Shown here piece after piece: positions 1,273 to 32,616 of a DNA stretch of 64,000 bases; position 1 is the first letter of the stretch, and every line of letters starts with the position of its first letter. Origin of the DNA: Blastocystis sp. Blastoise (Eukaryota > Protista > Bigyra: Opalinata); contig JBBPEB010000011.1 in NCBI GenBank assembly GCA_039096225.1, forward strand, positions 124,001 through 188,000. Reading direction: 5' to 3'. Under the pieces are notes generated by a model that saw only the letters and a program-made list of their open reading frames with translations, was not told where the DNA came from and did not search any database. The translations under genes were made by a program, and so were the position numbers.

Positions 1273-4047
1273 CATAATAATCTTTCTCTTCTCTTATTAG
1301 AGATGATATATTTAATATAACTTATGGAGAATGGACACTTCGAAAAGCGTCAGGTACATGCTTAGAACAATATGCTTCTTATTACCCAGATCTTATTATT
1401 CCATATTGTACTGAATCTATTCTTGTATATATATTTATAAAAGTTTACTATCTTTTAATGATATATTTTCTTTGTTTATTCTCCTCTTATTCTATAGGAA
1501 TCATTGTATTCTTCTGAGTGGATCACTCAAGAAATGGCCGTTGTCGCTCTTGCCGCCATGGCAAATGGCGCGCAAACGCAACTCTATCCTTATCTACCTA
1601 CATTTATTAAGTATATAAATTATTTATGTGTTTTTTTATATATGAGTAGTTCATATATTTTTTCATTTTTTTATATATATTTTTATCTTTCCTATTCTTT
1701 AATATATATATATAGAGTTCTCTTTCCTATTCTTTAATATATATATATATAGAGTTCTCTTTCCTATTCTTTAATATATATATATAGAGTCCTCTTTCCT
1801 ATTCTTTAATATATATATATAGAGTTCTCTTTCCTATTCTTTAATATATATATATAGAGTTCTCTTTCCTATTCTCTGTGATCCTCCTAATACATCATTA
1901 TTTTCCTCTATAACTTGGACACTTGGCAAGTATTCATTATATATACTAGAGAGAGAAAAACAAAGCTTCTTACCAAATATGATCCATATACTACTACAAG
2001 CAAGTGACCAACCAAATCCACTTGTATATATTCATATATATAGTTATTATAGTTATTATAATTAAAATATTAATAATAATAATAATAATAATTATTATTA
2101 TCTATATATATAGCTTCAAAGAGCTTCATATTTATGTATAAATTCAATTATTGAGAATGACAATGAGTGCGTCATGGACTGCTATTTCGACTTGATATTT
2201 CAATCCATTTATTCACAATATACTAACAATACTGTATATTTTCTATTTATTATATTCTTTAATTATTATTCTATATAGATTTATAATTATTCAATATTGC
2301 TAATGCTACTAGGGAATTTAGCGAAGCATTATTCAGATCATTTCTCCCAAGGGAATTATCCTGAAATGACTCTGGATATACTTATTAATCGTTGGAAATC
2401 TTTAGGGAATCTTGAAGAAGGAATGATCTATGTCATGAATAGTCTTAGTAATGTTATCTATGTATATATGTTTTAATATATACTTATATTATTATAATTA
2501 TATATGTAGTATATACATCTATATAATGTGATACTATCTATAGGCTTTGGGTGATAAAATGGATATATATATAGAAGATATATATAAGAGGATAATGAGT
2601 ATTATAGAAGAAAGTTTTAATATATATGACTTGAAACAAGTAATTAATTATAATAATGTTATAATAAAAGCTATACTATTAATTTTTATAGGAAAAAGAT
2701 GAAGAAGAAAATGATGAAGATGAGGATGAGATCTTTTTAATATCTTCTTCATTTGGTTTACTGAGTACAATAATTGAAACTGCTCCTTCAAAAATATCTT
2801 TACTTTTAGAACACTCATCTCTCCTTTCTTCTCTCTATAAAGGATGTGTTGTATATATATATTATATATTATATATATTATATATATTATATATATTATA
2901 TATATTATATATATTATATATTATATGTATTATATAATAATAAAATATAATAATAATAAAACATAATAATAAATAAAATAATACTATATGACTCTGTATA
3001 TAGTCCACAAGTGATTCTCTTCGTATTTCTTCCTTTTATCTTTTAGGTACTATTTCTTTCTCTCTATTCCCTCTTATCTCTACATCTGTATCTCAAGTTA
3101 TTCAACTATGCTTTCAATATATTGATATTCAGTATTCTATATATTCTTGTTTTCTCATTTAATATTATAACAAATACTATTATATTAATTAATAAATTAA
3201 ATAAATAATTTTAATATTAGTAACTACTTTTTAAAAATTCTTCTATATCTATATATATATAGATATCCTGAAGTTACTTCTTCCTGTTTATGGACACTTG
3301 GTGTTCTCTTTAATAATATTCAACAAGATACTTCTTCTTATATATCCATTCTATATATATTCACTCTATATATGTATATATATATATATTCACTCTCTCT
3401 CAATATATATATACCATAATATATACTCTAAAAATATATATACTACCTATATATATTCATCTTTCATATCTACTAAAAACAACTAATATCATCATAATCC
3501 ATATCTATTCTTAATTAAAAATAAATATCGTTAATTGATTCTACGATAATTCCTCTTCTCCGTACAAATGACCCTCTTCCTTTCTCTGTACAAGAATCTC
3601 TGACGAATACTATTGGATATATATGTAGATATTGTACTTCTACGATTCATCCATTGCTATCAAAGGACTTTGGTACTCTCTGCTCTTGTTTATCCTATAA
3701 TGATAATAATCAAGAGAAAAATGATAGTTGTCTTGGAATTATTGATATGATTCATTACGATCCTGAACTTCTTAATAAATATTATAAACAAATTATGGAA
3801 CTTATCACATCTTGGTATTTACTTTTTTATCTTTTTTTAACAAGTCTTTTTTTTTGAGATATACGTTTTTATCTTATTTTTAATATTACTTATTAGGGGA
3901 CCCACAGTTGATCAAAATCTAGCAACAAGTTTCTCGAAAATCTTATTCTTATTCAAAGAAAACCATTTGTCCGAGTGGTCAATCATTACACAAACTATAC
4001 CTACAAATGTTTTGATAAGTCTTCAATCTATATATCAGTTTGAATAA
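1..4047 (+). CDS. TNPO1: Transportin-1 / karyopherin-beta2-like importin (multi-exon, 5' end outside window)
   Basis: Spliced HEAT-repeat peptides match recalled transportin motifs: DFWTAF, acidic loop then EWTLRKASGTCLE, EMAVVALAAMANG, ITWTLGKYS, CLWTLG, QESLTNTIG, QEKNDSCLGI. Stop TAA at 4045-4047. Confidence 0.85.
1686..1876 (+). repeat. Tandem repeat (35-37 bp unit, 5 copies) spanning a 3' splice site
   Basis: Unit (AT)nAGAGTTCTCTTTCCTATTCTTTA, with acceptor AGs ending at 1715, 1752, 1787, 1822 and 1857. Confidence 0.95.
3342..3524 (+). other. Putative U12-type intron with AT-AA termini in transportin
   Basis: Starts ATATCCATT, branch-like TTCTTAAT at 3508-3515, no AG inside the interval; removal gives SSY|ISLIDSTIIPLLR in frame. 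Confidence 0.6.
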
Positions 4048-10892: not shown

Positions 10893-11418
10893 TTAGATGT
10901 TAAGCTTCGTACGTCTCCAATGACGTCTCTTAGAATTGTATCTATAAAATAGAAATATTCGATATTCTTGGAATAATATATAAATAATAATAATAATATA
11001 AATAATATTATAATATAAATAATAGTAAATTGAATAATAATAAATTGAATAATAAAAATAACACCAATATATTAAAAGATGAATAAAAAACAATATCAAC
11101 AAACAAAAAATAATAATAATATCTATACAAAACATAATATTATAATATTTCAATAAAAAATAAGCAATCATATATGAAAAAACATCATAAAAAAAAGTAA
11201 ATGAAATCAAAGAATGTAATAAAGTATAAATAAGTATCTGATAGTGTTATCAGTACGCATACGGATCCATTGAGGAAGAGGTCTGTTTTGATTCATCTTT
11301 TTAGCGAGAATCTTCTTAGTACGGAAAGACTTATGAGAAGGCAATAGGATAAATAGAATGAGCAATTGATGTATCCTTCATTGATTTAAGAAATTATGAA
11401 TAATAGAAGACTTACCAT
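10893..11418 (-). CDS. RPL39: 60S ribosomal protein L39 (exons 11418-11416, 11341-11238, 10941-10893)
   Basis: Spliced 156 nt = 51 aa + TAA: [51 protein letters not shown]. Needs two non-canonical junctions. Confidence 0.96.
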
Positions 11419-11515
11419 GACACAATATGAGTAGTAAGGCCAAATATATTGTCTAAATAAAGAAAGCAAGAGAAAATTTTGGTTACAAGGAAAAAGAAGT
11501 GATTTTTTAAAATAT

Positions 11516-11580
11516 GGGGGTATTTTCTTCTATATAAACAATTTGTATGTATTTCATATTTCATCCAGGGGGTATTTTCT
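11516..11580. promoter_or_regulatory. Duplicated 13-bp motif GGGGGTATTTTCT upstream of RPL39
   Basis: Exact copies at 11516-11528 and 11568-11580, 100-160 bp upstream of the ATG, in otherwise G-poor DNA. Confidence 0.5.
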
Positions 11581-13107
11581 ATTTTTCATTCCTGCTCCCT
11601 AGTTCCGTGATTCTTTCATTCATTTCTCCATTTCTTATTATCTAATCTTGATTATTTCATTTTTTTCAATCTCACATAAAATGTGTATTTCATTGTATTA
11701 AAGGCATTTATTATTTATGTTCTCATTGTCTTATGATCTCCATTAGTCTTTATTATCATATGAATAAAAAAATAAGCAATAATAAGGATTTCTTAATTTC
11801 GTAGTGTTCTTCATGAATGTGTATGCTTGTAAATAGTTCATAAAATTCATTTATGAAGGAATCTTGATTGTCTAGTTTCATAATCAATTTTTAAAATTAC
11901 CATTTTTATAGAAATTCAGTATTTTCTATTGATTTATGTAGAGTTTAATATAATAAATTAGTTCAAAATATTAAGAATTATTATCTACATGATATTGGAA
12001 ATTATAAATAGGATATTATACTTGGAAACGATCAATTATATCGAAAAAAAAACTTTCATTTATTATTTCATAAAAATAAAATAATTCTATAGAGCAAAAC
12101 AAAAACATTCAGACGTAAAACTTGTAAAAAAAGCCATAAATAAGAAAAAACTTATATACAAGAGATTGAAAATAAGAAAATACTACAAAAAAATAATGTA
12201 TAAAAACAAACATCTGAATTCTACAGAGTGATGAAAACAATAGATATGACCAAAATAGATATAAATAAAAACAATTTAGAAACTAAAACATAATATTCTA
12301 AATTGACTCATAAATCTTATAAAAAAAAATAAAATATAGATAAAAAAAAGAAAGAAAAAAAACAATATATGTATATATATATAAAGATGATAAAGAGAAG
12401 AACAACAAATAAATATAAATATAATATTATATCAAATAGTATTTACAATTCGTATATAAACAGTAAATGAATACCAGTAGACTGGCAATGAATATATCGA
12501 TAATTCATAGAACAAAGAAAATATCTTATGAGAAAAATATACGTTATACAATAGTAAAATATATGTTATATATATACATAAAAAGTGAATTTCACTATTA
12601 CATTGAAAATAAAAATTTAAAAAAAAAAATGTTTTTAACAATTTAAATAAAATAAATTGTTATTAAATAGAGTATAGAAATGAATTCATTATAAGACCAA
12701 TAGGATAATATATATAGATATATGTTCTTATAAATATAATATTAAAAAGATTACAACATATTAATAATAAACTTATAAATATGAATAGATTAATTAATAT
12801 GAACGAGAGAGACTTTTTCAACGATCTTAATAATGTGAGTATATAATAATAAGAAATATAATATAGAGAAGAGACTCTTAAAGAAGAATGTCATATATAT
12901 ATATTATATAGAAATAGAAAGAATATATATATATATATTAAGAATAATATACTTTATTCTATATAGATAATAAGTAAATAGCAATTAAATATTATGATAT
13001 AAATGATAACATAAATACTTTATATTTATCAATAATATATAATAATATATTATAAACATATATTATATATATATAATATAAAATATGAATGAATATGATG
13101 ATGATTA

Positions 13108-16100
13108 TTAAGAAGAGTTTGAAGGTATTTGAGCCATAAAGAGTGTTCTATACATATCATTATTCTCTAATAAAGCAGCATGAGTGCCACTAGCAAGTAT
13201 TTCTCCTTTATTCATGAGATATATAGTATTACATACAGTTAACATATTCATATTATTCGACATAAATAATACAGTACAAGCATGATTCTGTTTCCATTCA
13301 AGAAATGAAGATAAAAACCGTTTTTGAGTAGGATTATCAAACATTGTGAATGGATCATCAAATATCATAAATGAGGGTCTTCGAATAAGTGCACGTGCAA
13401 AACATATCTTCTGCTTGTCTGCCATCGAAAGTTGATCTTGAATTTCTCGAATAGGGGTGTTTAATCTATAGATATTAATATTCATAATCATTAATGTATA
13501 TAAAGTAATATAGTATTATGGTATAGAAGAAAATTAAAAGGAAAAAAGAAAAGAAAATAAGTAAAATTTTAAAAAATTTAAAGGAAACATAAAAAATATA
13601 TATATAATAAAATAAAAATTAAAAAAAAAAATAAAATAAAATAAAAATTTAAAAATAAAATAAAATAAAAATAGAAATACTTTTGAGGGAGTTTCATAAT
13701 ACTATCGAAACAGGATGCCATCAGTAATACTTCAATAATATCAGCTTCTGTCGGATATCCTTTTCCATTCATTCCCATGATTATATTGTCCCTGACTGTC
13801 CCTTCAAATAATACAGGAGTTCTCCAAAATACACTGATATTATTACGAATCAGTTTCTCAGACCATTTACGTATGTCTTTATCATCTATGTTTATTATAC
13901 CCACTATAGAAGAAGATAGAATATATAATATAGGTAATAGTTTTAATAAATATAACTATATATATAATAATAAATATAACTATATATAATAATAAATATA
14001 ACTACATATATAATAATAAATATAACTATATATATAATAATAAATATAACTATATATATAATAATAAATATAACTATATATAATAATAAATATAACTATA
14101 TATAATAATAATAAATATAACTACATATATAATAATAAATATAACTATATACTTGAAATATAGAATCGTTCTAAGACACTTACAATACAATCACGGCCAC
14201 AATCTGGATCTCCAACAAAAGCTACCATATCTCCCGCGGGAATAGAGAAGGAAATATGGCGTAAGACATTCACGGGATTATCTTCAGGATATCGTAAAGT
14301 GACGTTGTTAAACTCAATAGCTCCCTTAATATCTTGAAATTGATTGGATGAGATTGATTTGTGATCTTTATTTGGATATTTAAGAAGATTTGAAAGATAC
14401 TGTGACGCATCTTGTGTAGGTATATCCTTAAAAACAGTATTCAATAGTGTTCTGACATAAAAACCACTATATAATAATAATAATAATAAATATATATATA
14501 CCCAAATTGAATACAGACCATACAATAGAAGAGAGATTCATAAGTAATATACCCATGATTCACAAAAACACTACCAATATACAGATACACGGGGAAAATA
14601 AGATATATAATAAACTATAGAGAAGATATGTATTGTTATCGATAATAATAATATTAATATTAATATATATACATAATCAATAGTAATAATGAATATAAAT
14701 AGAATAAATATGATATAATAATAAACATATGAATGAATATAAATATAATAAATATGAATATAATAAATATATACCTGTTCTAATGTATAATATAAGGAAT
14801 GAATATTGATTCCTGATTTATTATAAATATCCACGGTTTTATGGAGGTCTTTAACTAATGACGACGTAAATGCATTCCCAAGATTATAATTATATATAGA
14901 TGGATAATTACTTAGGAAACTTGTAAATATTTGAGTATACTAGAAATAAGAATAATAGCGACAATATTCATAATATATATTAATAAATATATACATATAA
15001 ATATATATATTAATATATATATATATATAATATATATATTAATATATATATATATATAAATCATAATATAAAATGAAATAAAACACTAAATTTTATAAAT
15101 AAAAAAACTAGAATAAAATAGATATAAATAACTACATACAGCAAAAAGATATCGATTGATTCTTCTTGTATTTTTATATTTATTATGTCTTATCGCATAA
15201 TCTGTATAGATAAGAAGAATTGTTGATACAACGAAAGTTAAACCAAAGTATATATTTGTAAAACAAATTAATATATAAATAGTAATAGCAACTAAGATAA
15301 CATGAGTATAAGTAGGAACATTCCAAATCATATAATATCGAATAGGAGTGAAAATATTAACCATTAAACATGCTACTGCATCTATATAAGATATAGAAAT
15401 ATACTTATAATAATGACAATAAATACTATTATTAATAATATTATATACATATATAATGATAAAATAAAAGAAATATCAAATAATTATTATATATCACATA
15501 ACAATAAATAATATTATAGATGATTATATATATATAAATCCAATGATAAATAAATACAAGGTGTATCATTAAGAGAATCAAAATAACTTTGATCTCTATG
15601 GAGTATCTGATTGACAGCTTTGATTTTAAGTGACGCCATGATACTATCGGCGAATAAAGAGGTACCTAAATTACAACCACAAAAAACAAGAAAGAAGACA
15701 AAACATGATAAAAGAGTATATAAGAATGATTTAAGAACAGCATAATCATTCGTAAATATCTCTATAGAACATATAGAATAGTATGAAATAAATATAAAAA
15801 TAATCATCATTAGTATGAATATCTCAAACAAACAAAAAAATTATAAATAGAAAAAAATTTATAAATAGAAAAAAATTAAAAAATAAACATAATATATATA
15901 TATACCATCATTATAGCATACATCAAATATATTTTTAACATAATTGATTAAGAATGGATAGAGTGTACATTTAATTATACTAAAAATAACAATAAGAATA
16001 TAATAAATATGATGATTTTCTGCATTATGTATAATTTCAAGAAGAGGTATGGTAGGATCTCTTCTATTTTGTTCTATATCATTATCTACGGTCTTTTTAT

Positions 16101-18870
16101 GACCTAATATACATATAGTATTACTATGTCGACTTGGCTTATGATTTGTGATCATACTATCTTTTCTTCCTTTATATTTAACAGATCCTGTTATTTGAGA
16201 TGAAGAAGAAGATATAGCAGTAGGAGAAGGAAGATTGGTATCATAATAAATAGAATAGATAGAATCGATCTTCTGTAAAGATTCATAAGTTCCTTTCGCT
16301 ATAAATTGATTGGATTCCATTATATAGATACGATCTGATAATGTACAATTATGAATCATCTGACCTGTAGTTAATAAACACATATTATTACGATTCATAT
16401 ATTTATATATATTAGTCAATAATTGACTTTCTAATTGAGGATCAAAAGAACTTAAAACATCATCTAAAATCAACATCTTTGGGTGTGTCATCAATGCACG
16501 TGCAATACAGACTAAGCATGCAATATCTGTAGGTATTTTTATAGAAGAATCACCTACCATAGTATTAAACCCATTAGGTAACTTTTGTATAAGTGTATGT
16601 AAGCCACATAATTCAATAATTTCTTGGAATTCATTTTGATTTATTTCTTCTTTATTAAAACATAATACTATATTCTCTTTAATTGTTCCCATAAATAATT
16701 GAGGTTGATGAGAAACATATGCAATCATTTGACTGTATAGAGTAGAGTTAATATCCTTTATATTAATATTATTAAGAGTAATAGTTCCTTCATAACCAGA
16801 ACGGAAACGAAGAAGAAGAGATAAAAATGTTGTTTTTCCTGAACCACTTGGACCTACTATACAGATATGTTCCCCTTGGGAAATAGAGAAGGAAATATCA
16901 TTGATAGAAGGTTTCTCTGCTGATTTAAAGAGGTATATAAGATGTTCACAAGCAAGAGAAAAGGTATTGAAATCTGAAATTGAATATTTATTATTATTAT
17001 TCACAAGTTGTTTATTCGGTTGATGATGACAAACAGAATAGAAGTTTGATGAGTATTGAAATATAGTTCTTATCGTTGTATAGTTAGTATGTACAGAATA
17101 GAGAAGAGATAAAGATAATAATGCTAGAATAAGTCCTACTAATTTACGACTTGTTAATGTAAAGGAAGTTTGTATAAATGAAAAACTGGATATTTCATTA
17201 CACTATATATATAATGAATTATAGAAGAATCATTAAAAGGTGATTTATAATTGAGATTATAAAAATATAGAAATATAAAGAAGAATATATAAATATAAAG
17301 AATAAGAATAGAAAAATATAAAGAAAAAATAATAATATAAATATATAAAGAATAAATAATAATTTATATACATAAGATTGACATGTTTCTGATAAACTAT
17401 GATAATATTGACCACATAAATTATAGAGATGAATAGTATTTCCAGAGGTACAATTGTGTTCAATAAATAATGTATAATAATAATTACGATCATAATTTTG
17501 AGAATAAGAAGTAGCAAAGAAGAGTCCAGAAATACAGAATATAAGAGAGAATACAGATAAACCCAAGAAGAAACTTATTGTATATTGTCTCTTAGCAGTA
17601 ACATGTTTTGTATCCATGATCTAGAGATATCATATATATATATATAAGATTATTATCTAATGAATATATAATGAATATATATATAATAGATAGAATAATA
17701 AAACTACTACTAGAATAAAAAATAATAATAAATATTAATATATATACTGAAGATTGGAATCGATTAATAAATTCTTGTTCACTAGTAAATGATTTAATAA
17801 TATGAATATTCCCAATAAAACTGGTCATTAAGGCGATACTAGCTGTTTTTACATCACCAAAGTATTTTTGTAACTGGTTGAACTTATTAGAATACATTTT
17901 AAAAGTACAGAAATAAAAGGTATATAATAATATCATAACTACAAACGTCTTCCAGTCCTATATATAATAAATAAATAAATATAATAAATAAATATAATAA
18001 ATAAATATAATAATAATAAATAAATAAATATAATAAATAAATATAATAATAATAAATAAATATAATAAATATAATAATAATAAATAAATAAATATAATAA
18101 ATAAATATAATAATAATAAATAAATAAATATAATAATAAACAAATGAATATGATAAATATAATAAATAAGCATAATAATAATAAAAAATAAGCAAATAAA
18201 TACATAATAAAGTCCAAAGATAAGAATGCCAATATAATTTGAATTGGATAATATATAATCATATAAAGCATCCGCCATCTTGGAGAAATAGTCTTTTGCT
18301 TCTCTAGATAGTATTTGAGCCATTTTCTGAGGCTTCGAATACTCAATAAATTCAAAATCTTGAGATAATAGTGATCCTATCATGTTGTCACGAGCACGAA
18401 TATAAATATGATCTATAATAGTGAAATAAGTAAATCAATATATATATATATATAGTATTCATTTTTAAGATTATATACTAACAAAAATAGACGTAAAGTA
18501 ATTTGCTAGTGAGCTTGTAATTGTTAAAATGAGAATTATAGCTATCCAGAATAGAAATAAATGTAAGACAGTCGTGTCATTCTTATCTTGAGAAAAACTG
18601 TAATCAAAAAAATAACCACATAAAATATAAGGAAGAGGATATAGCAAACCATGAATTAAGCATACTATATATAAAAAGAAATTAATATATCTAACATATG
18701 TTTATAAATAGCAAACACTTACAGATCATTCCGAAATAGACATATATATTATCTGACGGTACAGAAAAGTATCTCATGAAACTACATAGATTAGTCACCT
18801 TAGGCATATTATCCTCCATTATATCACAAGAATCATTTGTGGATTCTGGATTACTTTGGTCGTTATTCAT
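13108..18870 (-). CDS. Full-length ABCB/MDR-like transporter (TMD-NBD-TMD-NBD) with degenerate ATPase motifs
   Basis: NBD1 has GPSGSGKTT, QPQLFMGTIKENI and IARAL. NBD2 has IKGAIEFNNVTLRYP, PVLFEGTVRDNI and FARAL. Hydrophobic exons precede each NBD; introns are GT-AG. Confidence 0.88.
13945..14148. repeat. Intronic minisatellite (about 22-25 bp unit, about 8-9 copies)
   Basis: Unit AATAATAAATATAACTA(T/C)ATATAT inside an ABCB intron. Confidence 0.9.
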
Positions 18871-20038
18871 AATATGCTTCTAGTTATTGTGTTTAAAATA
18901 ATAAATAGACAAAAATTTTGAAATTTCATTTGTTGTTTTCTTTTAGTAATTCGATATTTTTATATTTATACTACAAAAATATGAGATTCTCACGATTATA
19001 TTATTTTGAATTATTCTTTTTTTATTGGATAAAAATTTCAAAAAGATCATTCACCAATAACGGATTCACCCCTTTGTTTTTATTCTTTCGTTTTCATCAT
19101 CTTTAATCATTATTTCTTTCTAAATCGTAATCATTCTGATGCAGTACTAATTTAAAGTGTAGAATGTTTTTTCTCTTATTGCAGTTATAATATATATATA
19201 TATATTTGATGTTGATATGATTATTGAATCATTATTTTTACATATATTGTTAGCTACTAATAAGTCTGAATGATCCCTGAATGGTTCGAGACGGCATTGA
19301 AAAAAAAGTTTATCATAAAAAAATATTTTTTGCATTAGAAATAGGAAACAGACGTTTTTATTCCTTTTTTCATTATCACTATAAAACAGATGTTTTGAAA
19401 ACAAAGTCTAGGAAAACAATATTCTCGTTTTAAATACATATAGATGAACTTGTCTTTTGAAATGGACTAAGTCTATACTTGTTTTATAAACTAGATAGTA
19501 ATGTGAATCTCTAGAAAGAATAAGAAATGTTAAAAAAACAAAAATGTCTTTATAACATGAAATTTCTCTTTTATAATATGCTTATTTGAATATCAGGATG
19601 AAAGCTATGTATTTCCGTTAGTAAGGATATAAATATTTATATGATTTAAAAAAAAAATAAAGCGAGATTATTTTAATTAGTCACAAAAAAATTGTTTTAG
19701 AATATAGAAGCGAGTATATCTTGCTAGGAAGCATTTCTATGAACAAGACAAAATACTTTAAAACTTCATAATGAATCATAAATGTATGTCTAAGAGTAAA
19801 ACAAGGAAAGTTCTTCATAAACAGTTTTTTGTTCTACAAATTTCAAAAATAGGAGCATTTTTCAATCAACCAATTTCTTCTATTCATTATACATAAATAG
19901 ATTTCCCATGAATATATTTATTTTTGCTAAGAGTTTTCAAAAATAATTGCGAGGAAAACAAATGATCACTATTTATCGTTTTTTTTTAATTAAAATTGTT
20001 TTATTTATTGTGATATTATTGTATTAATTTGAAATAAA

Positions 20039-20408
20039 ATGTCTGAACAAGGTGAATTGATATGATAGCATAGACTATAACTAATCTATAGGTGAACAAG
20101 CTACTCCTATAAAAGATGAACAAGTTGTTCCTGTATTTTGTTATTCTTTCTATTTGTAGTTTATGTTTATGATGATCTAGGAAGCTGCTGATAATGAAGA
20201 ATTTGCTTCTAAGGATATGTCTGCTGAAGAACTCAAGAGTCTTCCCATCAGAGCTTATCTCGATAAGACAGTTGTCCCTATTTTATTATTAGGTTTAAGT
20301 GAATTAACCAAAGAAAGACCTGCTGATCCAATCAAGTTTTTAGCTGAATACTTATTACACAATAATCCTCAGAGTCCTCCTACTAATCCTGATGATAAGA
20401 AACGATAA
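20039..20408 (+). CDS. DPY30: DPY-30 homolog (COMPASS subunit), 3 exons
   Basis: [40 protein letters not shown] is the Dpy-30 motif. Short GT-AG introns at 20052-20091 and 20133-20180. Confidence 0.92.
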
Positions 20409-20587
20409 ATCATTCACTTGTTTATGTTTTTATAGTCTCTGTTTATTTTTCTTTTTGTTTGTTACGTTTCAGTTATTTATATAATTTATTCACAATAACA
20501 AAAAGAAAGAATTATTATTAATGAAGAACAAAAGTCAAATCCTTATTTTTTAAATGAAAAAATTATTCTTTTAGACATATATTACTA

Positions 20588-21196
20588 TTATTCAGTATAT
20601 TTTGATAGAGATTCCTATAGATATTTAAAAGATTTAAATAGATAAAGAGAAATATGAATACTTTCATATAAGCGAAGAATGAATTATTGATTTGAACCTC
20701 AGAATTCATTTCATTTATTGAATTAAATAGTAATAACATTAAAGAATTCTATTCATATGTATATATATATTGATGTAATAGGAAAAGAGGAAATGAAAAG
20801 GATATAAGGAACAGTTAATTGACCAACAGTTATATGATATTTATCGACAAATGCTACGAAATCTGATATTTGATTGGTTAATAGTATATCGTCAAATGTA
20901 TAGAAGTGTATCTATAGGAAGTAGTATAGTATTCAATATATATATATATATAAATATACATAATTTTTTATCTAAATTTACATAATAATATATATACATC
21001 TTTATTTAATAATGAACAAGCGATCCATTGTAATAAAAACTTTATTGGAGCGTAACCGCGAAATGCCTATATAGTATAGTAATAATAATAATTATTATTA
21101 TTATATCTAATAATAATATATATATATATGCTCCACATCCCCATTTGCCTGTAGCAATAGCATCCTTTGTTTCTGGAGATGAAAACCCTATATATG

Positions 21197-21277
<81 letters not shown>

Positions 21278-21378
21278 TTTATTAAATTCTCTTAGTAATG
21301 TATTTTGAAGTAGTTGTTCTTGAGGATAAGAACGGAAATGAAGTGCATCAATTGCAATAATAGTATCAGATGTATTAC

Positions 21379-21425
<47 letters not shown>

Positions 21426-22893
21426 AAGAATGTAGTACAGTAAGAATAATAATAAATTATATATATATAATTATATTATGATTAAAAAGAATTGAATAAA
21501 CATAAATTTTTAATAAAAACAATAAAGATTAATTCTATATATATATATATATACGTAGAATTAAGAAGAGGTCCATCAAATTTGAATGTCCAAGCATATC
21601 CTGTATATTTCGAATAAGGTCTAGTCCCTTCAATACATATAGATTCTACATCTTTCATAACATCACAGAATAACATACTAACTATCAATTCAGGAGCTAT
21701 AGTAAACATAATCTCTTCCTGAACACAACCAGTACCTAACACTCCTCCTCCTATATACCTATATACTATTACATAGAGTATATATAATATATAGTATAGT
21801 ATATAGTATATATATAGAATAGTATATATAGTATAGTATATATATTTCATAAACAAATAATAAAAAAACAAGGTTTCTATATAATAATATTATATATACT
21901 TATTTGCAAAATCGACTTTAATATCTTTGGGAATATCTCCAATTAATCCTTGCTGAAAGAGTCTGACTGGTTTGAGAGGAGTACAATCACTAGTCAACAT
22001 CTCTTTGGTATATATATGTGATAATACATGACGGGAGATCTTTATAGTACCTTCAGGCTTTGTTAATATAAATTGACGAAAATACTCAAATAAACATAAT
22101 AATTTCTCACAATAAATAGATTCATAACCACAAAGCCATTGAAATAAATCCACATGAATATTCTTTCCAGGCATATCATAAATACCTATAAAAGAGTAAT
22201 AAATATATATTTATATATTTATAGAAATATAAATATTAATAAAACAATTATATATATAGAAATAAAATAGAAATAAATACCTATAAAAAAGTAATAAAAA
22301 AATTATATATATCGAAATAAAAATACTAATAAAACAATTATATATATAGAAATAAAATAGAAATAAATACCTATAAAAGAGTAATAAATATATATTTATA
22401 TATTTATAAAAATATAAATATTAATAAAACAATTATATATATAGAAATAAAATAGAAATAAATACCTATAAAAAGCAATAAAAAAAAATATATATATATA
22501 GAAATATAAATATTAATAAACATCAATCAAAATAAATTAAAAAAAAAAATCTATAAACTTACCAAAAAACATAGCTATCAATAAATCACATGTTTCTGAT
22601 TTCGTTAATGATATAGATTTTTGTATATTACATTTCAGACGATCTAAAACGGACATGGATCTACTCTTTAAAAAGGCTTTCACACGGTTAATCATCCATG
22701 GTAATATTGTTGAAAAAAATAAATTATAATATTCATTATATTGAGGATGATTTTTCATCTTCAAAAAGGGTTCCATCTTTACTATAGTATCTAGATCATA
22801 TACATTTTTGATAAGTTTTGCAAAAGACTCTAGATTTTTAGGAGATTCTTCTACCATGAGTAAAGTTATTTTAGCCTGCTTATTGATTTGCAT
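20588..22893 (-). CDS. PARG: Poly(ADP-ribose) glycohydrolase
   Basis: [32 protein letters not shown] (catalytic GGG-x6-QEE), YSKYTGYA, IAIDA, REFNKAYIGF, ATGKWGCGAFRG, LLQWIA. C-terminus extended to 20588 via an AT-AC intron and a GT-AG intron. Confidence 0.92.
20730..20805 (-). other. U12-type AT-AC intron (76 nt) in PARG
   Basis: 5' end ATATCCTTTT, branch-like TTCTTTAAT (20746-20738), ends TTAC. Splicing opens a 68-nt exon flanked by a canonical in-phase GT-AG intron. Confidence 0.8.
21198..21277 (-). other. GC-AG intron consisting solely of GC(AT)38AG
   Basis: 80 nt; removal restores REFNK|AYIGF. Confidence 0.85.
22186..22562 (-). repeat. PARG intron 1 built of four 90-97 nt GT...AG tandem units
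   Basis: TATAG|GTATTT junctions near 22465, 22370, 22280 and 22185; units share sequence. Confidence 0.85.
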
Positions 22894-23345
22894 CTTGTTT
22901 AAATTAATGTTAAGAAATAAAAAAATATGTTTTTTGAAAGATTTAAAAAAATTCTCTAATACACAAACAAAAAAAAAACTGAATTTATTTCATAATTGTG
23001 TTGAATAAGAAAAGGACATTAATGTTGTGATTTAAAGTAAGATCCGTTGGAATCGAATATAGTCTTAATATAGATTAAAACTTAACAACAATATATCATT
23101 AATATAAAATAGTATAGACCATAAAAGAGAAAGTGTACTCCTAGATAATAAGAGTACAGATACTATTCATGTATCGTTATAGAATAATAAAAAAAGAATT
23201 ATAATTGTAAGAATTGTAAATATTAAAAAATAAAATGAAGATTAAAAGCCAAAACAAGAAATGACAAATAATTCAAGAAAAAAAAAGACAAAGAAATGTT
23301 AAAAAAAAGTGCAAAAAACATCAATTAAAAAAAAACTAGAAACAA

Positions 23346-24292
23346 TTAAAAGAAATCTTCTTCTAAATCTTCTTCTTGCATACTTAATAAATCAAGTTTC
23401 CAACGTAATATACCACCAATACCACCAAATCCCTTACAGAATTGAGCACCTTCTTGAGATTTATTAGTAATAAACTCAAGAGTACAACCGAATTTCTTGT
23501 AGTTATCTGCAAGCCATTCAAGGAAGAGTTCCTTTTCAACGACATCAAGATCATTTCCATCCTTATCCTTAAAGTTATTACCATCACGAGATTCCTCTTC
23601 AGTTAAGAATAAAACATTAGTTTCTCCAGTTTGATTATTCTTAACAGTAATACGTTGAGTACCAAGACTCTCCCATACTAATAAAGTTTCTATAGCACCC
23701 ATTTCTAAACACTTAAGAGTATCAGAAATACCATAACAGAATTTACCAGTATCTTTAGCTAATTCATCAAAATAAGCACCAATAAGTTTCTTTTCTTATA
23801 ATAATAATAATAAACATAATAATAAACATAATAATAATAATAATAAACATAATAATAATAATAATAATAATAAACATAATAATAATAATAAACATAATAA
23901 TAAACATAAACATAAACATAACAATATTCTTGAATGAATTTGACGTCAGCAAGAGTATCAGCAGCTAATTCAATGGCTTGATTGAATCCATTATCACCAC
24001 CGTAGGACACATCCACTACTTTTACAACCATCTCTTTTAATCTAGCATCAAATAAATCAGAGATTAATAATTGATCTTTGAATTCAGCAGCACCAGCTAA
24101 GACAAGACCAGCAACATTAGGACGATCGTTAGTAATAAAGAATTGAACAGCACATTCACAACACTTTCTCATATAATTATGTCTCTTTTCTAAACGAATA
24201 CGAGCGAAACGAAGAGCAGATTGACCACCACGACCATGCTTCTTAGGAAGATCAACCTATAGAGAATAATAATAAATATAAATAGAATAATA

Positions 24293-24373
<81 letters not shown>

Positions 24374-25184
24374 TATACAGTAAAACGATGAAGTACAGTT
24401 CTGGTATTACCACAAAGAGTACCATATAAACAACCACCACCATCCATAACGATGAAACCAAATACAGCATCATCCTGGAGTAATTCTTGAAGAGCCTATA
24501 TAGGAATATATATAATATATAGAATAATAATAATAAATATAATAATAATAATAAACATAATAATAATAATAAATAAATACTTCAGTATGGAATTTATTAT
24601 CACATAAATAAAGAGAAGTATTAATAGGTTTAAAAGGTTCAAAATCAATATTAACTTTCTTTTCTTTACCATCATCAGTTAAACAAGTACCACAATAAAT
24701 AACTAAACCATTATCAGGAACTTTATTATATAACTTCAGACGTTGTTGGGTAGAAGTAATAGCACCTAAGACAGAAAGACGATTGACACGAGACTTAATG
24801 TTAGATGCAGTACCATATTCACCAACTAACATAGTAGCCGTATTGGAAATCTATAAGAAATAATATAAATGTCATAATAATTATTGCTTAAAATATATAT
24901 AAACATCTACATTCATATATAGATATCATATAAACATAGAAAAACATACAGGTTCCTTAGGACGAATAATAAGAGAAATCATACTAGTACCATTACTATA
25001 TAAAAACAAAGTAAAAAATAGCCAAGTACTCTAGAAACAACGTATATATAATATTCATACCCTCTAGCAGCTTCTAAATTTTTAATAAGTTTCTTGATCT
25101 TCCACATTTCAACGTGGGCTTCTTCAGATGTAAGTTCCTTGCTCTAGAATCATTACACATATTTGAAATATGATATTATACCAT
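23346..25184 (-). CDS. ETF1: Eukaryotic peptide chain release factor 1 (7 exons)
   Basis: [38 protein letters not shown] and [10 protein letters not shown] all present. Last intron is non-canonical. Confidence 0.97.
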
Positions 25185-26940: not shown

Positions 26941-27632
26941 TAAATAAATAGAATAACTATTAATAAATAAAATAACTATAATAAACCTATAAATACATCA
27001 CAAATAGTCTCTTGAAGACAATAAGTAATACATATAAAAATGAGTTGTTGATTTTCTGAAGATAATTGTGTTAACAATGACGCATCTTTCGACAATGAGG
27101 GATATATCGCTTGCAAATAATCATAGCACGTCATCTTCTGGGTTTCTATATTGGTATTCTTATATAAATTAAGAATATTTAATAAGAATTCTAATGTTTG
27201 ATTACTTTCTGTATTTAAATTCATCGATATATTCTGTATACTCTTATTCAATACATCTAAATTATGAATACTTGTATCCATTTGATTCATCATGTCTCGA
27301 GTATTATTTAATATTTCTTCAAATGATTTTAATGAATCATCCGAAGGAGATAAAGAAAGATTTATAGAATTCGAAGAATGATGAGATGGACTCATTAGTG
27401 GAGATATATCATGTGACTGAATGGTGTTGAGTTCGTCATCATGACGACGCTTAATGCCTGATGACGCAGCATGTGTTGGAGAAGAAGCAAGAATTGATGT
27501 TGAACTATTGATATTCTCTTTCTTATCTTCTTTTACAGTAGTTGGTATTTCTATAGAGATTGTATTGACAGATAGACTTTGAGTAGTAGAAGTAACAAGA
27601 GAAGGAATTGCAGGATATATGACTTTTATAGA

Positions 27633-27702
<70 letters not shown>

Positions 27703-27703
27703 G

Positions 27704-27801
<98 letters not shown>

Positions 27802-27802
27802 G

Positions 27803-27856
<54 letters not shown>

Positions 27857-30800
27857 CTAATTGGTTTTGAATTAATTGATTTTCATTTGTATTTTTCAAT
27901 ATATCATGATTATTCTGTGAAGGTAAGGGAGAAAGAAGTTGAAAGGATGTCAAAGAGTTTGTCAGTGATGCATTAGAGAGAGAATGGATCTTTGATGTAT
28001 CTTTTGAAGATAAAACACTTTCAGAACTAGTATAAGGGTTTGTTAAAGAAGAATCAAGGGCTGTAGCAGGAAGAGGAGAAGAAGAAGGAGATAATTTTAT
28101 ACGTTTACTAGAAGGAGAAGAAGTAGATTTCAAAGAAATATAATAATTATTATTATTATCTAAGATATTATTATTATTATTATTATTATTATTATCTAAG
28201 ATATTATTATTATTATTATTATTTTCAATAATGTTGTCCTGTTTTCCTGTAGAATTTATGATTGAAGAATCAATTATAGGTTTAGACATGTCTATACATA
28301 GAGGAAGATTGGATACAACTTGTATATCATTCCCATGTGAATCTGATATTGTTGTTGGAAGTATATGCTGTGTAGATTGATTTGTACTATTATTAATTTG
28401 AATAAGAGAAGAGCTTGAGGATTGAAAGGAAGAAGGTGATGTATTATAAGAAAAACTAAGGGATGAAGGCACAAAGACTCCTTTTTTGGGTTCTATCGGA
28501 CTAAAGGGTGGAAAACATGAAGAAGGAGGAAAAGTAATAGCTTTATTTATTTGAGGAGAAACATGATTATTTATTTGAGGAGAAATATTATTATTTATTA
28601 GAGGAGAATCATGATTATTTATTTGAGGAGAAACATTATTATTTATTTGAGGAGGAACATTAATAGTATTATTTGGTAACGATGGAGAAGAAGATGAAGC
28701 ATTGTTTTTAGATAATATATTCGAAGGTTGAGTAGAAGAATTAGCTATAGAAGATGTATGTATATCTTGTTGATTGATATTAATATGACTATTATCAATA
28801 GAATGATCTTGAGAAAGAGATTCATGAGTATTATTCATTATAATCATATGAATCGAATCATTCATGACATCATAGTCATTATTATTCTTTTCATTTTCTT
28901 TTGAATTATCATTTTCGGTAGGTATATTCTTTTCATTCTCTGTGTTACTATTATTATCATTATCATGAAATTGTATTTCTTTCTCCTCATTTGAAAAGGA
29001 TACTGTAGGAGAATAACTCGCAATAGTATTCCTTTCTGATTCAACAGATGATTGTACAGGTTCTAATCGAGGGATTCTATTTATATCCTTATCTATAGAT
29101 ATATATTTGGAATTTACATATATATTTGTATGAATAGAATTTCCTTCGCTATTCATATCATTCTCTTGTTCTATCTCCATATCATTAGATTTATTATTAT
29201 TAGTGTTGATACTCACAGAAGTCTCATGACTTATGCTCTCTTTATTCTCTTCAAATTCATTTGAATTCATATTATTCTCTTCAAATTCATTTGAACTCTT
29301 ATTATTCTCTTCAAATTCATTTGAATTCTTATTATCCTCTTCAAATTCATTTATATTCTGATCATTCTCTTCAAATTCATTTGAATTCATATTATTCTTA
29401 TGAGAATCTTCATGATATAAAGTACCTAATAAAGAATCATCACTATCTTCATCATCTTGTTGTATAGAATGATTTATAGTGCTATTATCTTGATTCTTCT
29501 CGTCTTCACTTGAGTTACTATGAACAGATAACAACGATAAACGTTTAACTAATGAAAGACGCGTCACTTCAGGAATAGATAAACGATTTAATGGATGTGA
29601 AATACTATTTCGTTCAGATGATGTTAATATAGAAATAGAAGGAAAAGATACACGTCTATTATTACTATTATTATAATTATTATTATTAGTAGTAGTATCA
29701 GAAGAAGCTTGAATATCCGTATTAAGAATGGTCTTTCTATTAGTTGTATCTACTTGTATAGAAAGAGAATGAATAGGAGGAAGACTGTCTGTCTGCTCTT
29801 CTATATCCATTGGCTCTTTTATGGATTGTAAAGGAATGAAAGTACTATTGTTAGTAATATTTTTCTCATCATCTTCATTATTATTATTATTTTTATCTTC
29901 ATCTATATTATTATTATTTCTCTCTTCATCTTCATTTTTAATATTTTTCTCATCATCTATTTTATTATTAATTTTTTTCTCATCATTTATATTATTCTCA
30001 ATTTCCTTTTTATCATTTGAAAGAGAGGAAATTGAAGATTTTTGTTCTGTTTGAGTATCTGTCATAATTCCATTCACATTCTTAACGTCTTCGGAGATTA
30101 TTGGAATATTATTTGTATTTATATTTATTATTTCTGTGGATGGAGATGAAGAAGTATTTTTATTTATAGGCAGACAAGTATGATCTTCTATATTATTTGA
30201 AGGAGATAGAATAACATTAGAAGAAGAAGTATTAGATGTAATACTAGTTGATAGAGGAAGAGAAGAGAGTTGATTATTATTCTTGGTTATTTGATTATTT
30301 TCTAAATTATTTGAAGTAGTAGTAAAAGAAGAAGTAGATACAGGAGTAACTACTGGGAGAGATGAAGATGAAATAGATGTATTATTTATATTCAAAGAAA
30401 GTGAGTTATTCATAGTTATTTCTGTAGGAAGAGGAGAAGAAGGAGAGGATTGAACAGTATTTTCTTTTAATATAGTATCATTAGTATTAATAAGATTATT
30501 ATTATTATTATTATTATTTTGAATACTATTATTATCAATAATTTCCTTATTATTCTTATTATCAATAGTTTCTTTATTATTCTTATTATCAATAATTTCC
30601 TTACTATTCTTATTATCAATAACTTCCTTACTATTCTTATTATCAATAATTTCCTTATTATTCTTATTATCAATAATTTCCTTATTATTCTTATCTTCAA
30701 CAGTATTCTTAATAACATTATTATTATTATTATCTTCAACAGTATCAGGAGGCAAAGGAATCGAATCATTAATCTCTCTATATAAACATATACACATATA

Positions 30801-32616
30801 TATATAAACATAATAGAATATATATATATAAGCATACAAGAGTTGTTCTCCACGCTTGACTTGTTCTAGCCAATCAGATCCCATAGTTGTTTCTATATAC
30901 GTCTTTTCATTGGGTAAACAATTATTATAGATATCTATAATATTCACAGGTATAAAAGTATATATTAATGTGAATAATAACTGTACTGAAGGGATCAACC
31001 GACGTATATGGATATATACAATCTATATATATATAATTAAATAATAAATAAATAAATATATAATTGAGAAAAAATATATATACTTTTTTAATAAAAATTT
31101 CTATAACTCTTCGTTTGATTTTAAGTTCATTTCTTCTCGTTTGAATCATTGTAATCAGACCATTTAAGCAAATTTCAGTTTGATTTTCTTTTCTATTTTC
31201 TAAAGAAGTAAGTAAACCTACAAAAACATGTGTATTTCCATGGGAATATAAGAAATCTAATAGACCTATAGTAATGTCTTTGATTTTTTGAGATGACATT
31301 TGACTGCAAGGTAATAACTATAGAATATTATTTATATATAATATAATATATAATAATAATAAATAAATAATAAATAAATAATAAATAAATAATAATAATA
31401 ATAAATAATAAATAAATAATAAATAAATAATAATAAATAATAAATAAATAATAATAAATAATAATAAATAAATAATAAATAAATAATAAATAAATAATAA
31501 ATAAATAATAATAAATAATAAATAAATAATAAATAAATAATAAATAATAATAAATAAATAATAATATACACAACGAATAGTTTTTTCTCCTTCTAAATCA
31601 GAATCTATGCATTGATATACATAACAGAATCCTAATAATTCTAATCCGGCAATTCTTACTTTTTGATTATGATTTTCAACTAATATAATAACAGCATCAT
31701 AAAGGTTTCTTTCATTTAAGCCACATAATTCTTCAGAAGTCACATGTGAATCCGATTTTGATTGTACTAATGTTAATAGTCTATTCTTAATGGAATCACT
31801 TATTTGTATTTGATTAAACCAATCAGATGAAGGAAGACTTTTAATAGATTCTTTTAATATATCAATTTCTGATTGAGAATTCTCTAAAACCATCATTCCT
31901 GCCATTGGAGATACGCGGGCTGCACGTATTTCTCCAGTAGAATTAAATGATTGGTTAAATCGATCTTTTGATGAAACTGACGCACGTGATACTGTTGAAG
32001 ATTGTGAACGATTCATTGGAGCACGTGATGTGGATATAACTCCTATAATAATAATAATAATTATTATTATAATGCAAATGATAAGAATAAAATAACAAGA
32101 ATACATTAATAATAATAATAATAATATATAAATATAAATACTTCCTGGAGGAGATAATAAGCCCATATTCATCTTCGACGTATAATTCCCACGGTTTTTC
32201 ATTGATGTTGATATATTTGTTTCATTCATAAAAGTATCGTTTTTAGTATTAGTCGATAGAGTTCGTTTAGAAGAGGGGATATCTGTATAGAGACTAGATA
32301 TCGAGAGAGAACTGGTATTATTATCATCATTTGAGGAGGGATATAAAGAGGATCTTTCGACACGTGTATATGTATGTGATGAAGGAACAGAAGAACTCGA
32401 ATGGAATACTTTAGAAGGAAGGTCTGATTCTGATATATAAATATTTTTATATAATAATAGTAATAATAATAATATTATAATATGAATAATAAGAATAAAA
32501 AAGTATATATATACGAGTATTTTGATTAATTGATTGTATTTCAGAAATTTCTATATATAGAGTAGAGAATGAATTGAATTATTATGTTTTATATTATAAA
32601 TGATAAATGAAATAGA

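What the first reader, a model, noticed from the sequence alone, without database searches (positions are those of the whole stretch)
10942..23929. Recurring rule: non-canonical splice-site bases equal the spliced-mRNA base at that position
Seen: five introns deviate from the local GTA...TAG consensus. RPL39 intron 1 ends TG (upstream exon ends ATG). RPL39 intron 2 starts ATAC (next exon starts ATAC). The last eRF1 intron starts GA and ends AA (next exon starts GAA, upstream exon ends CAA). Two PARG introns start GCAT (next exons start GCAT). All six deviant bases match the mRNA across the junction, creating short direct repeats, while about 31 midasin introns are canonical. Inference, three options: (a) a spliceosome that tolerates AT/GA donors and TG/AA acceptors where junction repeats exist; (b) RNA/cDNA-templated conversion of intron edges in well-expressed genes; (c) an assembly artefact from polishing with RNA-derived reads. 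Options (a) and (b) would be a new system; (c) must be excluded first.
Basis: partly seen in the sequence, partly recalled or inferred. Interest (0 to 1): 0.88.

Follow-up and report, generated by a model that had tools for sequence, protein, structure and literature searches.

The report
Intron edges overwritten by mRNA sequence
In this assembly the first or last bases of many introns, above all in ribosomal-protein genes, carry the bases that lie across the splice junction in the mRNA. The pattern is real in the sequence, but it most likely means that spliced RNA reads were used to correct the assembly, not that splicing here is new.

Summary
All five introns have the stated ends, and each deviant end base equals the base across the junction.

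The rule also extends beyond the window. In eight ribosomal-protein (RP) gene copies elsewhere in this 33-Mb genome, 15 of 23 intron copies are not GT-AG. They are GT-TG, GT-CG, GT-AA, GA-AA, AT-AG, GG-AG and GC-AG, plus one intron with an 18-nt junction repeat. All 21 deviant end bases match the cross-junction base (joint chance about 1e-11.5).

Two RPL15 copies that are about 98-99% identical differ exactly at intron edges. One keeps GTATGT or TATAG; the other carries the neighbouring exon's letters.

U1 and U6 are standard, and RPL15, RPL39, RPS21 and RPS3A would be unspliceable as written. The same exon configuration is left intact in eRF1, transportin and midasin but altered in RPL19, so the effect seems to follow presumed expression and chance similarity.

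Real mRNA-templated rewriting stays at about 0.07.

Other first-stage notes on this genome ('relaxed splice-site system', GT-TG in RPS21) probably describe the same thing.

The parts
11342..11415 (-). RPL39 intron 1, GT-TG in the assembly. The last two bases (TG) equal the last two bases of exon 1 (ATG). It is one substitution away from the local TAG acceptor.
   Evidence: The C15 paralogue also ends in TG and has a 7-nt copy of its own exon end, TATCATG. Other taxa have an intron at this position.
11238..11341 (-). RPL39 exon 2 ([35 protein letters not shown]). Both deviant intron ends flank this short exon.
   Evidence: Pfam PF00832 relatives at up to 86% identity.
10942..11237 (-). RPL39 intron 2, AT-AG in the assembly. 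It starts ATAC, which is also the start of exon 3. No GT-AG alternative exists, and it has no U12 consensus.
   Evidence: In the C15 paralogue the copy is 9 nt long, ATACAATTC.
21198..21277 (-). PARG intron a, GC(AT)n...TAG. It starts GCATATATA, which is also the start of the next exon. It is one substitution (+2) from GTA.
   Evidence: The interior is a plain TA microsatellite.
21067..21131 (-). PARG intron b, GC-AG. It starts GCAT, which is also the start of the next exon.
23796..23929 (-). eRF1 last intron, GA-AA in the assembly. Position +2 (A) equals the second base of the next exon, and position -1 (A) equals the last base of the upstream exon. Two substitutions would give GTA...TAG.
   Evidence: The interior is a (TTA)n/TTATG simple repeat found at more than 100 places in the genome.
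23790..23917 (-). Alternative in-frame GT-AG model for the same eRF1 intron. It would replace the conserved EKK with EYCYK.
   Evidence: Read. Considered less likely, because the AAG codon for the conserved Lys sits just upstream of the alternative acceptor.

Best explanation
The deviant bases are most likely not in the organism's DNA. Sequence derived from spliced transcripts (RNA-seq or cDNA reads) probably entered the consensus or polishing step of this assembly.

Inferred mechanism: a read that ends a few bases beyond an exon edge is laid unspliced onto the genome. Its overhang, which is the start of the next exon or the end of the previous one, then lands on the intron edge. Where such reads outnumber true intron-covering reads, the polisher rewrites the intron edge to the mRNA sequence. 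That happens in very abundant transcripts, or where the overhang happens to resemble the intron edge.

Shown here: the copying rule, its contiguity from the junction, its concentration in ribosomal-protein genes, and its differences between near-identical gene copies.

Not shown: that RNA reads were used at all. That the true DNA is GTA...TAG at these sites is also an inference.
For: 1. Every deviant end base equals the cross-junction base: 21 of 21, of which 19 are independent, joint chance about 1e-11.5. The match is always contiguous from the junction.

2. Most window cases are one or two substitutions from the local GTA...TAG consensus.

3. Density seems to follow presumed expression.
- 15 of 23 intron copies are non-GT-AG in RPL39, RPS21, RPL15, RPS3A and RPL19.
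- This compares with 1 of 6 in eRF1 and none among about 20 recalled midasin-region introns.
- A next exon starting GC has altered the donor in RPL19 introns 4 and 5. It has not done so in eRF1 intron 4, transportin or midasin.
- PARG, which is presumably not abundant, is altered only where the overhang matches 3 of 4 or 8 of 9 bases.

4. The two RPL15 copies share a 1.77-kb block at about 98-99% identity, yet differ at intron edges.
- Intron 3 donor: GTATGTTG in C33 versus GATGCTG in C2, which equals the exon 4 start GATGCT.
- Intron 2 acceptor: TTATAG in C2 versus TTCAAG in C33, which equals the exon 2 end CAAG.

5. The written ends would disable essential genes. Examples are GT-CG and GT/GA-AA in both RPL15 copies, AT-AG in both RPL39 copies, GG-AG in single-copy RPS3A, and an 18-nt exon copy in RPL19. 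Meanwhile U1 (ATACTTACCT) and U6 (ACAGAGA) are standard.

6. A true U12-type intron in the window (ATATCC...TTCTTAAT, 3342-3530) does not follow the rule.

7. Overhangs of spliced reads into introns are a known source of false variants. GATK SplitNCigarReads hard-clips them for that reason (PMC5729405).
Against: - No read-level evidence was obtained. How the assembly was made is unknown.
- Some copied tracts are long (7, 9 and 18 nt), longer than a simple short-overhang misalignment would give. They would need local reassembly or noisy long cDNA reads.
- Not every susceptible ribosomal-protein intron is altered. RPS21 intron 2 keeps CAG/TAG although its exon ends AA. RPL19 intron 2 keeps AAG although its exon ends TG.
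- The single -2 changes without a -3 change need a particular aligner behaviour.
- The same deviation occurs in old, intron-diverged paralogues (TG in both RPL39 and both RPS21 copies). This could also be read as evolutionary conservation of a real feature.
- The one actin intron examined is canonical and uninformative.
Confidence: 0.78

Rival explanations
1. Real mRNA- or cDNA-templated rewriting of intron edges in highly transcribed genes. Breaks near a splice junction would be repaired using the spliced transcript as template, copying exon sequence into the intron edge. The altered introns would still have to be removed by some tolerant or repeat-guided mechanism.
For: It predicts the same sequence pattern as the artefact: an exact, contiguous copy of the cross-junction exon, an excess in ribosomal-protein genes, and copy-specific tracts. 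Tracts of 7-18 nt are easy to explain this way. Transcript-templated repair is known from yeast experiments (my own knowledge, not checked here).
Against: It leaves both RPL15 copies, both RPL39 copies, both RPS21 copies and single-copy RPS3A without usable splice sites. U1 and U6 are standard, and the introns called in low-expression genes are canonical. Two such events since a duplication that is only 1-2% diverged imply a very high rate of changes that should be lethal. No precedent is known.
Confidence: 0.07
2. Some of the five junctions are mis-modelled or are ordinary minor classes. RPL39 intron 1 and the eRF1 intron would use in-frame GT-AG alternatives, and the PARG introns would be natural GC-AG introns.
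For: In-frame GT-AG alternatives exist. For RPL39, the acceptor CATAAG| gives M-SFRTKK. For eRF1, the donor at 23917 and the acceptor at 23790 give EYCYK. GC-AG is a normal minor class of U2 introns.
Against: RPL39 intron 2, RPS21 intron 1, RPL15 introns 1 and 3, and RPS3A introns 1 and 2 have no GT-AG alternative. All four GC-AG introns seen are followed by an exon starting GC, which natural GC-AG introns have no reason to be. Relatives keep MPSHK, and in my own recollection eRF1 relatives keep EKK.
Confidence: 0.06
3. The direct repeats are scars of intron origin. The introns would have been inserted with target-site or fill-in duplications, as for introners or double-strand-break repair gains, or created by tandem duplication. 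Splice sites would then have to sit at equivalent points of the two repeat copies.
For: Junction repeats of 2-18 nt flank the introns. Introner-type non-canonical introns with direct repeats are described in Amoebophrya (PMC7789003, listed; abstract only read).
Against: RPL39 introns 1 and 2 sit at positions that other taxa also use (read-through forms ...Q|PSHK and IRY|VS). Intron interiors match only simple repeats, not an element family. Paralogue introns are diverged to saturation, yet the C15 repeats are perfect and match C15's own exon variant. Near-identical RPL15 copies differ at the edges.
Confidence: 0.04
4. A relaxed U2 spliceosome accepts TG, CG and AA acceptors and AT, GA, GG and GC donors, with no templating involved.
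For: Deviant ends recur in old paralogues. Other first-stage notes report about 9% non-GT-AG introns elsewhere in this genome.
Against: It cannot explain why 21 of 21 deviant bases copy the cross-junction base, nor the 4-18-nt exon copies. U1 and U6 are standard. In this sample the deviation is confined to ribosomal-protein genes and a few other introns (1 of 6 in eRF1, two in PARG).
Confidence: 0.03
5. The elements are removed at the DNA level, like ciliate internal eliminated sequences bounded by short 'pointer' repeats, and the assembly represents an unprocessed genome.
For: Short direct repeats of variable length flank each element.
Against: The elements keep one canonical spliceosomal end (GTAAGT or TATAG) and sit at ancient intron positions. 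No dinucleotide is shared among the repeats. TAA ends RPL39 and eRF1, so the code looks standard, and nothing else ciliate-like was seen.
Confidence: 0.02

Closest known systems
False variants from spliced-read overhangs misaligned into introns (the reason GATK SplitNCigarReads hard-clips overhangs; PMC5729405)
   Same: The wrong base at an intron edge is the base of the exon across the junction. The effect is contiguous from the junction and scales with transcript abundance.
   Different: That artefact is known in variant and RNA-editing calls. Here it would have been written into the reference assembly itself, with tracts up to 18 nt. I found no paper describing this for a polished genome.
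Reverse-transcriptase template switching, which gives false non-canonical 'introns' flanked by direct repeats (filtered in PMC4176328, listed)
   Same: Non-canonical junctions with short direct repeats at both ends are treated as a warning sign of artefact.
   Different: Those are deletions in cDNA. Here the introns are present in the genome sequence, sit at real, ancient intron positions, and keep one canonical end.
Introner-type and other non-canonical introns with direct repeats (Amoebophrya, PMC7789003; Fritillaria, from my own knowledge)
   Same: Introns lacking GT-AG and flanked by short direct repeats, tolerated by the host.
   Different: Those are genome-wide, element-derived families. 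Here the interiors are not a family, and in the genes sampled the effect is densest in ribosomal-protein genes and differs between near-identical copies.
GC-AG and U12-type (AT-AC) minor intron classes
   Same: Four of the deviant introns are formally GC-AG. The genome does have a U12-like intron (3342-3530) and a U12 snRNA candidate.
   Different: All four GC donors are followed by an exon starting GC. The AT-AG RPL39 intron lacks the ATATCC donor and the TCCTTAAC-like branch site.
Transcript-RNA-templated DNA repair and cDNA-mediated intron loss (my own knowledge)
   Same: Spliced RNA serving as a template that changes genomic DNA at intron positions.
   Different: The known outcomes are precise repair or whole-intron loss, not partial overwriting of splice sites that leaves an unspliceable intron.

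Membership tests
RNA-read polishing or consensus artefact | The deviant base equals the base across the splice junction, contiguously from the junction. | tested here: met
   21 of 21 deviant end bases match. Copied tracts are 1-18 nt and always start at the junction.
RNA-read polishing or consensus artefact | Frequency rises with transcript abundance and with chance similarity between the overhang and the intron edge. | tested here: met
   15 of 23 ribosomal-protein intron copies are altered, against 1 of 6 in eRF1 and none among about 20 recalled midasin-region introns. A next exon starting GC alters RPL19 but not eRF1 intron 4, transportin or midasin. The PARG cases have 3 of 4 and 8 of 9 similarity. 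Expression is presumed from gene identity, not measured.
RNA-read polishing or consensus artefact | Genomic DNA reads disagree with the assembly at these bases. | not testable with these tools
RNA-read polishing or consensus artefact | Changes are indifferent to function and include splice-dead ends in essential genes. | tested here: met
   GT-CG, GT-AA, GA-AA, GG-AG and AT-AG occur in RPL15, RPS3A and RPL39. Only two RPL15 copies and one RPS3A copy were found.
U12-type (minor spliceosome) introns | Donor /ATATCC or /GTATCC, with a TCCTTAAC-like branch site 10-20 nt from the 3' end. | tested here: not met
   RPL39 intron 2 starts ATACTT (ATACAA in C15) and has no such branch motif. The transportin intron at 3342-3530 does show ATATCC...TTCTTAAT.
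Natural GC-AG U2-type introns | GC donor with an AG acceptor, and no dependence on the sequence of the next exon. | tested here: inconclusive
   GC-AG ends are present in PARG a and b and in RPL19 introns 4 and 5. However, all four next exons start GC, with a chance of about 0.14 each for the C alone.
Introner or transposon-derived introns | The intron interior belongs to a multi-copy element family, with a target-site duplication of fixed length. | tested here: not met
   Interiors match only TA, TTA or other AT-rich simple repeats. Repeat lengths vary from 2 to 18 nt. RPL39 intron positions are shared with other taxa.
Altered spliceosome specificity | Changes in the U1 5' end or the U6 ACAGAGA box. 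| tested here: not met
   U1 has two copies with ATACTTACCT. U6 has ACAGAGA and the AGC triad. Prp8 and U2AF were not examined.

The most novel reading that the evidence does not exclude
The bases are real. In this organism, spliced transcripts of highly expressed genes would repeatedly serve as repair templates that overwrite intron edges with exon sequence. The resulting introns, which lack GT or AG, would still be removed exactly. This would need either a junction-repeat-guided excision step or a spliceosome that takes its cue from something other than the terminal dinucleotides.
Probability: 0.07. Interest if true: 0.92.

Novelty: not a real feature. Interest (0 to 1): 0.25.

Why it matters
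If it is an artefact, it matters in practice.
- Splice-site statistics for this genome are corrupted.
- Gene predictors that require GT-AG will break most ribosomal-protein genes, and many others.
- Several other first-stage notes on this genome probably describe the same error rather than biology. These include the 'relaxed splice-site system' note and the GT-TG introns reported in RPS21.
- The signature is a simple, assembly-only test for RNA contamination of a consensus, and it could be run on any genome. It consists of a deviant intron-end base equal to the cross-junction base, found mostly in abundant transcripts.

If the bases turned out to be real, this would be an unknown way of rewriting and removing introns.

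Tried and rejected

**Transcripts of the same species in the protein collection.**
- The RPL39 exon-2 open frame, given by reference, found only distant taxa, best 86% identity. A first try failed because the query was under 40 aa.
- A 1340-aa orphan ORF found nothing.
- So neither this species nor close relatives are in the collection, and the organism stayed unidentified.
- Spliced models were searched exon by exon, by reference only.

**Paralogue comparison for eRF1 and PARG.** Both are single copy, and their deviant introns match only simple repeats.

**Other checks.**
- Rfam on the window gave no family.
- Three contig starts were fetched; the two read (C34, C2) show no telomere repeat.
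- Actin has one canonical intron whose exon ends in AG, so it is uninformative.
- The literature search found no organism with this pattern and no report of RNA-polishing scars.
- RPS3A intron 3 could not be resolved. It is TG-AG or GT-GC, or a 1-nt error, and was left out of the counts.

**Readings rejected.**
- U12-type for RPL39 intron 2: no consensus.
- Translation starting at the ATG or TTG at the end of RPL39 intron 1: the upstream ATG plus a strong donor are conserved in both paralogues.
- Ribosomal hopping.
- Ciliate-type elimination.
Full report
**Setting**

The window is G000:C34:124001-188000 of a 33.3-Mb, 34-contig genome. It is about 22% G+C and rich in introns. TAA ends RPL39 and eRF1, so the code looks standard.

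Neither the species nor close relatives are in the protein collection. A 1340-aa ORF found nothing, and the best RPL39 match is 86% identical and from an unrelated alga. The organism stayed unidentified.

**The observation**

All genes of the finding are on the minus strand.

- RPL39 starts at ATG 11418-11416.
- RPL39 intron 1 (11415..11342) runs GTAAGT...CCTATTG. Its last two bases, TG, repeat the last two bases of exon 1.
- RPL39 intron 2 (11237..10942) runs ATACTT...TTTTATAG. Exon 3 starts ATACAA, so AGATAC stands at both ends.
- PARG intron a (21277..21198) is GC(AT)n...TAG, followed by the exon GCATATATAG.
- PARG intron b (21131..21067) starts GCATAT and is followed by GCATTT.
- The last eRF1 intron (23929..23796) runs GAATAT...TATAA. 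It lies between an exon ending CAA and one starting GAAAAG.

Most of these deviant introns are one or two substitutions away from the local GTA...TAG consensus, and the odd base is always the base found across the junction.

Two introns have in-frame GT-AG alternatives that change the protein. RPL39 intron 1 can use the acceptor CATAAG|, giving M-SFRTKK. eRF1 can use a donor at 23917 and an acceptor at 23790, giving EYCYK in place of EKK. Relatives keep MPSHK, so I rate these alternatives as less likely. RPL39 intron 2 has no canonical alternative at all.

**Is it more than chance?**

A script called 39 GTA...YAG introns between coding frames in the window, mostly in low-expression genes such as midasin and transportin. 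In these controls the intron end copies the upstream exon end for only 0-2 bases. The intron start copies the next exon for 0-3 bases, apart from one outlier.

The deviant introns of the finding have total junction repeats of 2-9 bases.

**Extension to other genes**

The genome holds a second RPL39 on contig 15. Its introns are diverged to saturation, yet it has the same TG acceptor and the same AT donor. Its copies are longer and match its own exon variant:

- The intron 1 end is TATCATG, the same as its exon 1 end.
- The intron 2 start is ATACAATTC, the same as exon 3.

A first-stage note on GT-TG in RPS21 led me to that gene. Both RPS21 copies have an exon 1 ending in TG and an intron 1 ending in TG, with no canonical alternative.

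- RPL15 (two copies) has intron 1 as GT-CG with a 7-nt copy of the exon end (AATATCG). Its intron 3 is GT-AA or GA-AA.
- RPS3A (single copy) has GT-TG with a 5-nt copy, plus GG-AG.
- RPL19 has two GC-AG introns, each followed by an exon starting GC. It also has one intron flanked by an 18-nt copy of the upstream exon end.

In all, 15 of 23 ribosomal-protein intron copies are not GT-AG as written. All 21 deviant end bases equal the cross-junction base. Nineteen of these are independent, with a joint chance of about 1e-11.5. Junction repeats exceed the controls (Mann-Whitney p about 1e-7).

**The most telling comparison**

The two RPL15 copies share a 1.77-kb block at about 98-99% identity, introns included. 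They differ exactly at intron edges.

- Intron 3 starts GTATGTTG in the C33 copy but GATGCTG in the C2 copy. The latter repeats the first six bases of exon 4.
- Intron 2 ends TTATAG in C2 but TTCAAG in C33. The latter repeats the last four bases of exon 2.

One copy thus keeps the consensus, and the other carries the neighbouring exon's letters. The copying is therefore recent and specific to each copy.

**What it is not**

- *Not an altered spliceosome.* U1 (two copies) begins ATACTTACCT, and U6 carries ACAGAGA.
- *Not the minor spliceosome.* The genome does have a U12-like intron in the window, 3342-3530, with ATATCC...TTCTTAAT. It also has a U12 snRNA candidate at 46.8 bits, below Rfam's threshold of 53. 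But that intron does not follow the rule, and RPL39 intron 2 lacks the U12 motifs.
- *Not an element family.* Intron interiors match only TA, TTA or other AT-rich simple repeats. The RPL39 intron positions are shared with other taxa: read-through proteins show ...Q|PSHK and IRY|VS.

**What it most likely is**

A templated process copies mRNA sequence onto intron edges. Two processes predict this: a technical one (spliced RNA reads in polishing or consensus) and a biological one (transcript-templated repair). I favour the technical one at about 0.78, for four reasons.

1. As written, both RPL15 copies, both RPL39 copies, both RPS21 copies and the only RPS3A copy lack usable splice sites. These genes are essential, and the splicing RNAs are standard.
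2. The effect depends on presumed abundance together with chance similarity, as a pile-up of misaligned overhangs would. A next exon starting GC has changed the donor in RPL19, but not in eRF1 intron 4, transportin or midasin. PARG is changed only where the overhang matches the intron at 3 of 4 or 8 of 9 bases.
3. The changes fade with distance from the junction and include a 1-nt length change, as consensus edits do.
4. Misaligned overhangs of spliced reads are a known source of false variants at intron edges (PMC5729405).

**Points against, stated plainly**

- I have no read-level evidence.
- Tracts of 7-18 nt are longer than simple overhang misalignment would give.
- Some susceptible ribosomal-protein introns are untouched (RPS21 intron 2, RPL19 intron 2).
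- The same deviation in old paralogues could be read as conservation.
- RPS3A intron 3 could not be resolved and was left out of the counts.

**Verdict**

Option (a) is disfavoured. Option (b) cannot be excluded without DNA reads and stays at about 0.07.

Noticed in passing
window 3342-3530 (+): The transportin intron has a U12-type donor ATATCC and a TTCTTAAT branch-like motif near its 3' end. It does not follow the cross-junction rule, so it looks like a genuine minor-spliceosome intron.
   Followed up: partly
L036 (G000:C24:844725-844868, +): A full-length U12 snRNA candidate at 46.8 bits, E 6e-7, below Rfam's gathering score of 53. The minor spliceosome is probably present.
   Followed up: no
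L026/L027 (G000:C33:1213350-1215100 and C2:26600-28350): RPL15 lies in a 1.77-kb segmental duplication that is about 98-99% identical. The block ends about 180 nt after the stop codon. The C2 copy is only about 27 kb from a contig end. A tRNA-like sequence follows the C33 copy only.
   Followed up: partly
window 26979-30998 (-): A 1340-aa open frame with no Pfam domain and no relative among 5.8 billion proteins. It is an orphan gene, or a lineage with no sequenced relatives.
   Followed up: partly
window 23796-23929 and 24285-24383 (-): eRF1 introns are built of (TTA)n/TTATG simple repeats. The same motif occurs at more than 100 places in the genome at 84-95% identity.
   Followed up: partly
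window 22186-22562 (-): PARG intron region made of about four tandem intron-like units, each ending TATAG|GTATTTATTTC. Another first-stage note already describes it.
   Followed up: no
L037 1950-2051 (G000:C32, +): RPL19 intron 3 is flanked by a perfect 18-nt direct repeat, ATTTATGCTTCTTTCTAC, which is a copy of the upstream exon end. This is the longest such tract seen.
   Followed up: yes
L024 2120-2345 (G000:C19, +): RPS3A intron 3 fits neither GT-AG nor the copying rule. It is TG-AG or GT-GC, or there is a 1-nt error at the junction.
   Followed up: partly
L002, L020/L021 versus the window: RPL39 and RPS21 each exist as two old paralogues. Coding exons are nearly identical (RPL39 150 of 153 nt; RPS21 exon 1 50 of 50), while introns cannot be aligned. 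This could reflect strong codon bias, gene conversion, or cross-mapping of RNA reads during polishing.
   Followed up: no
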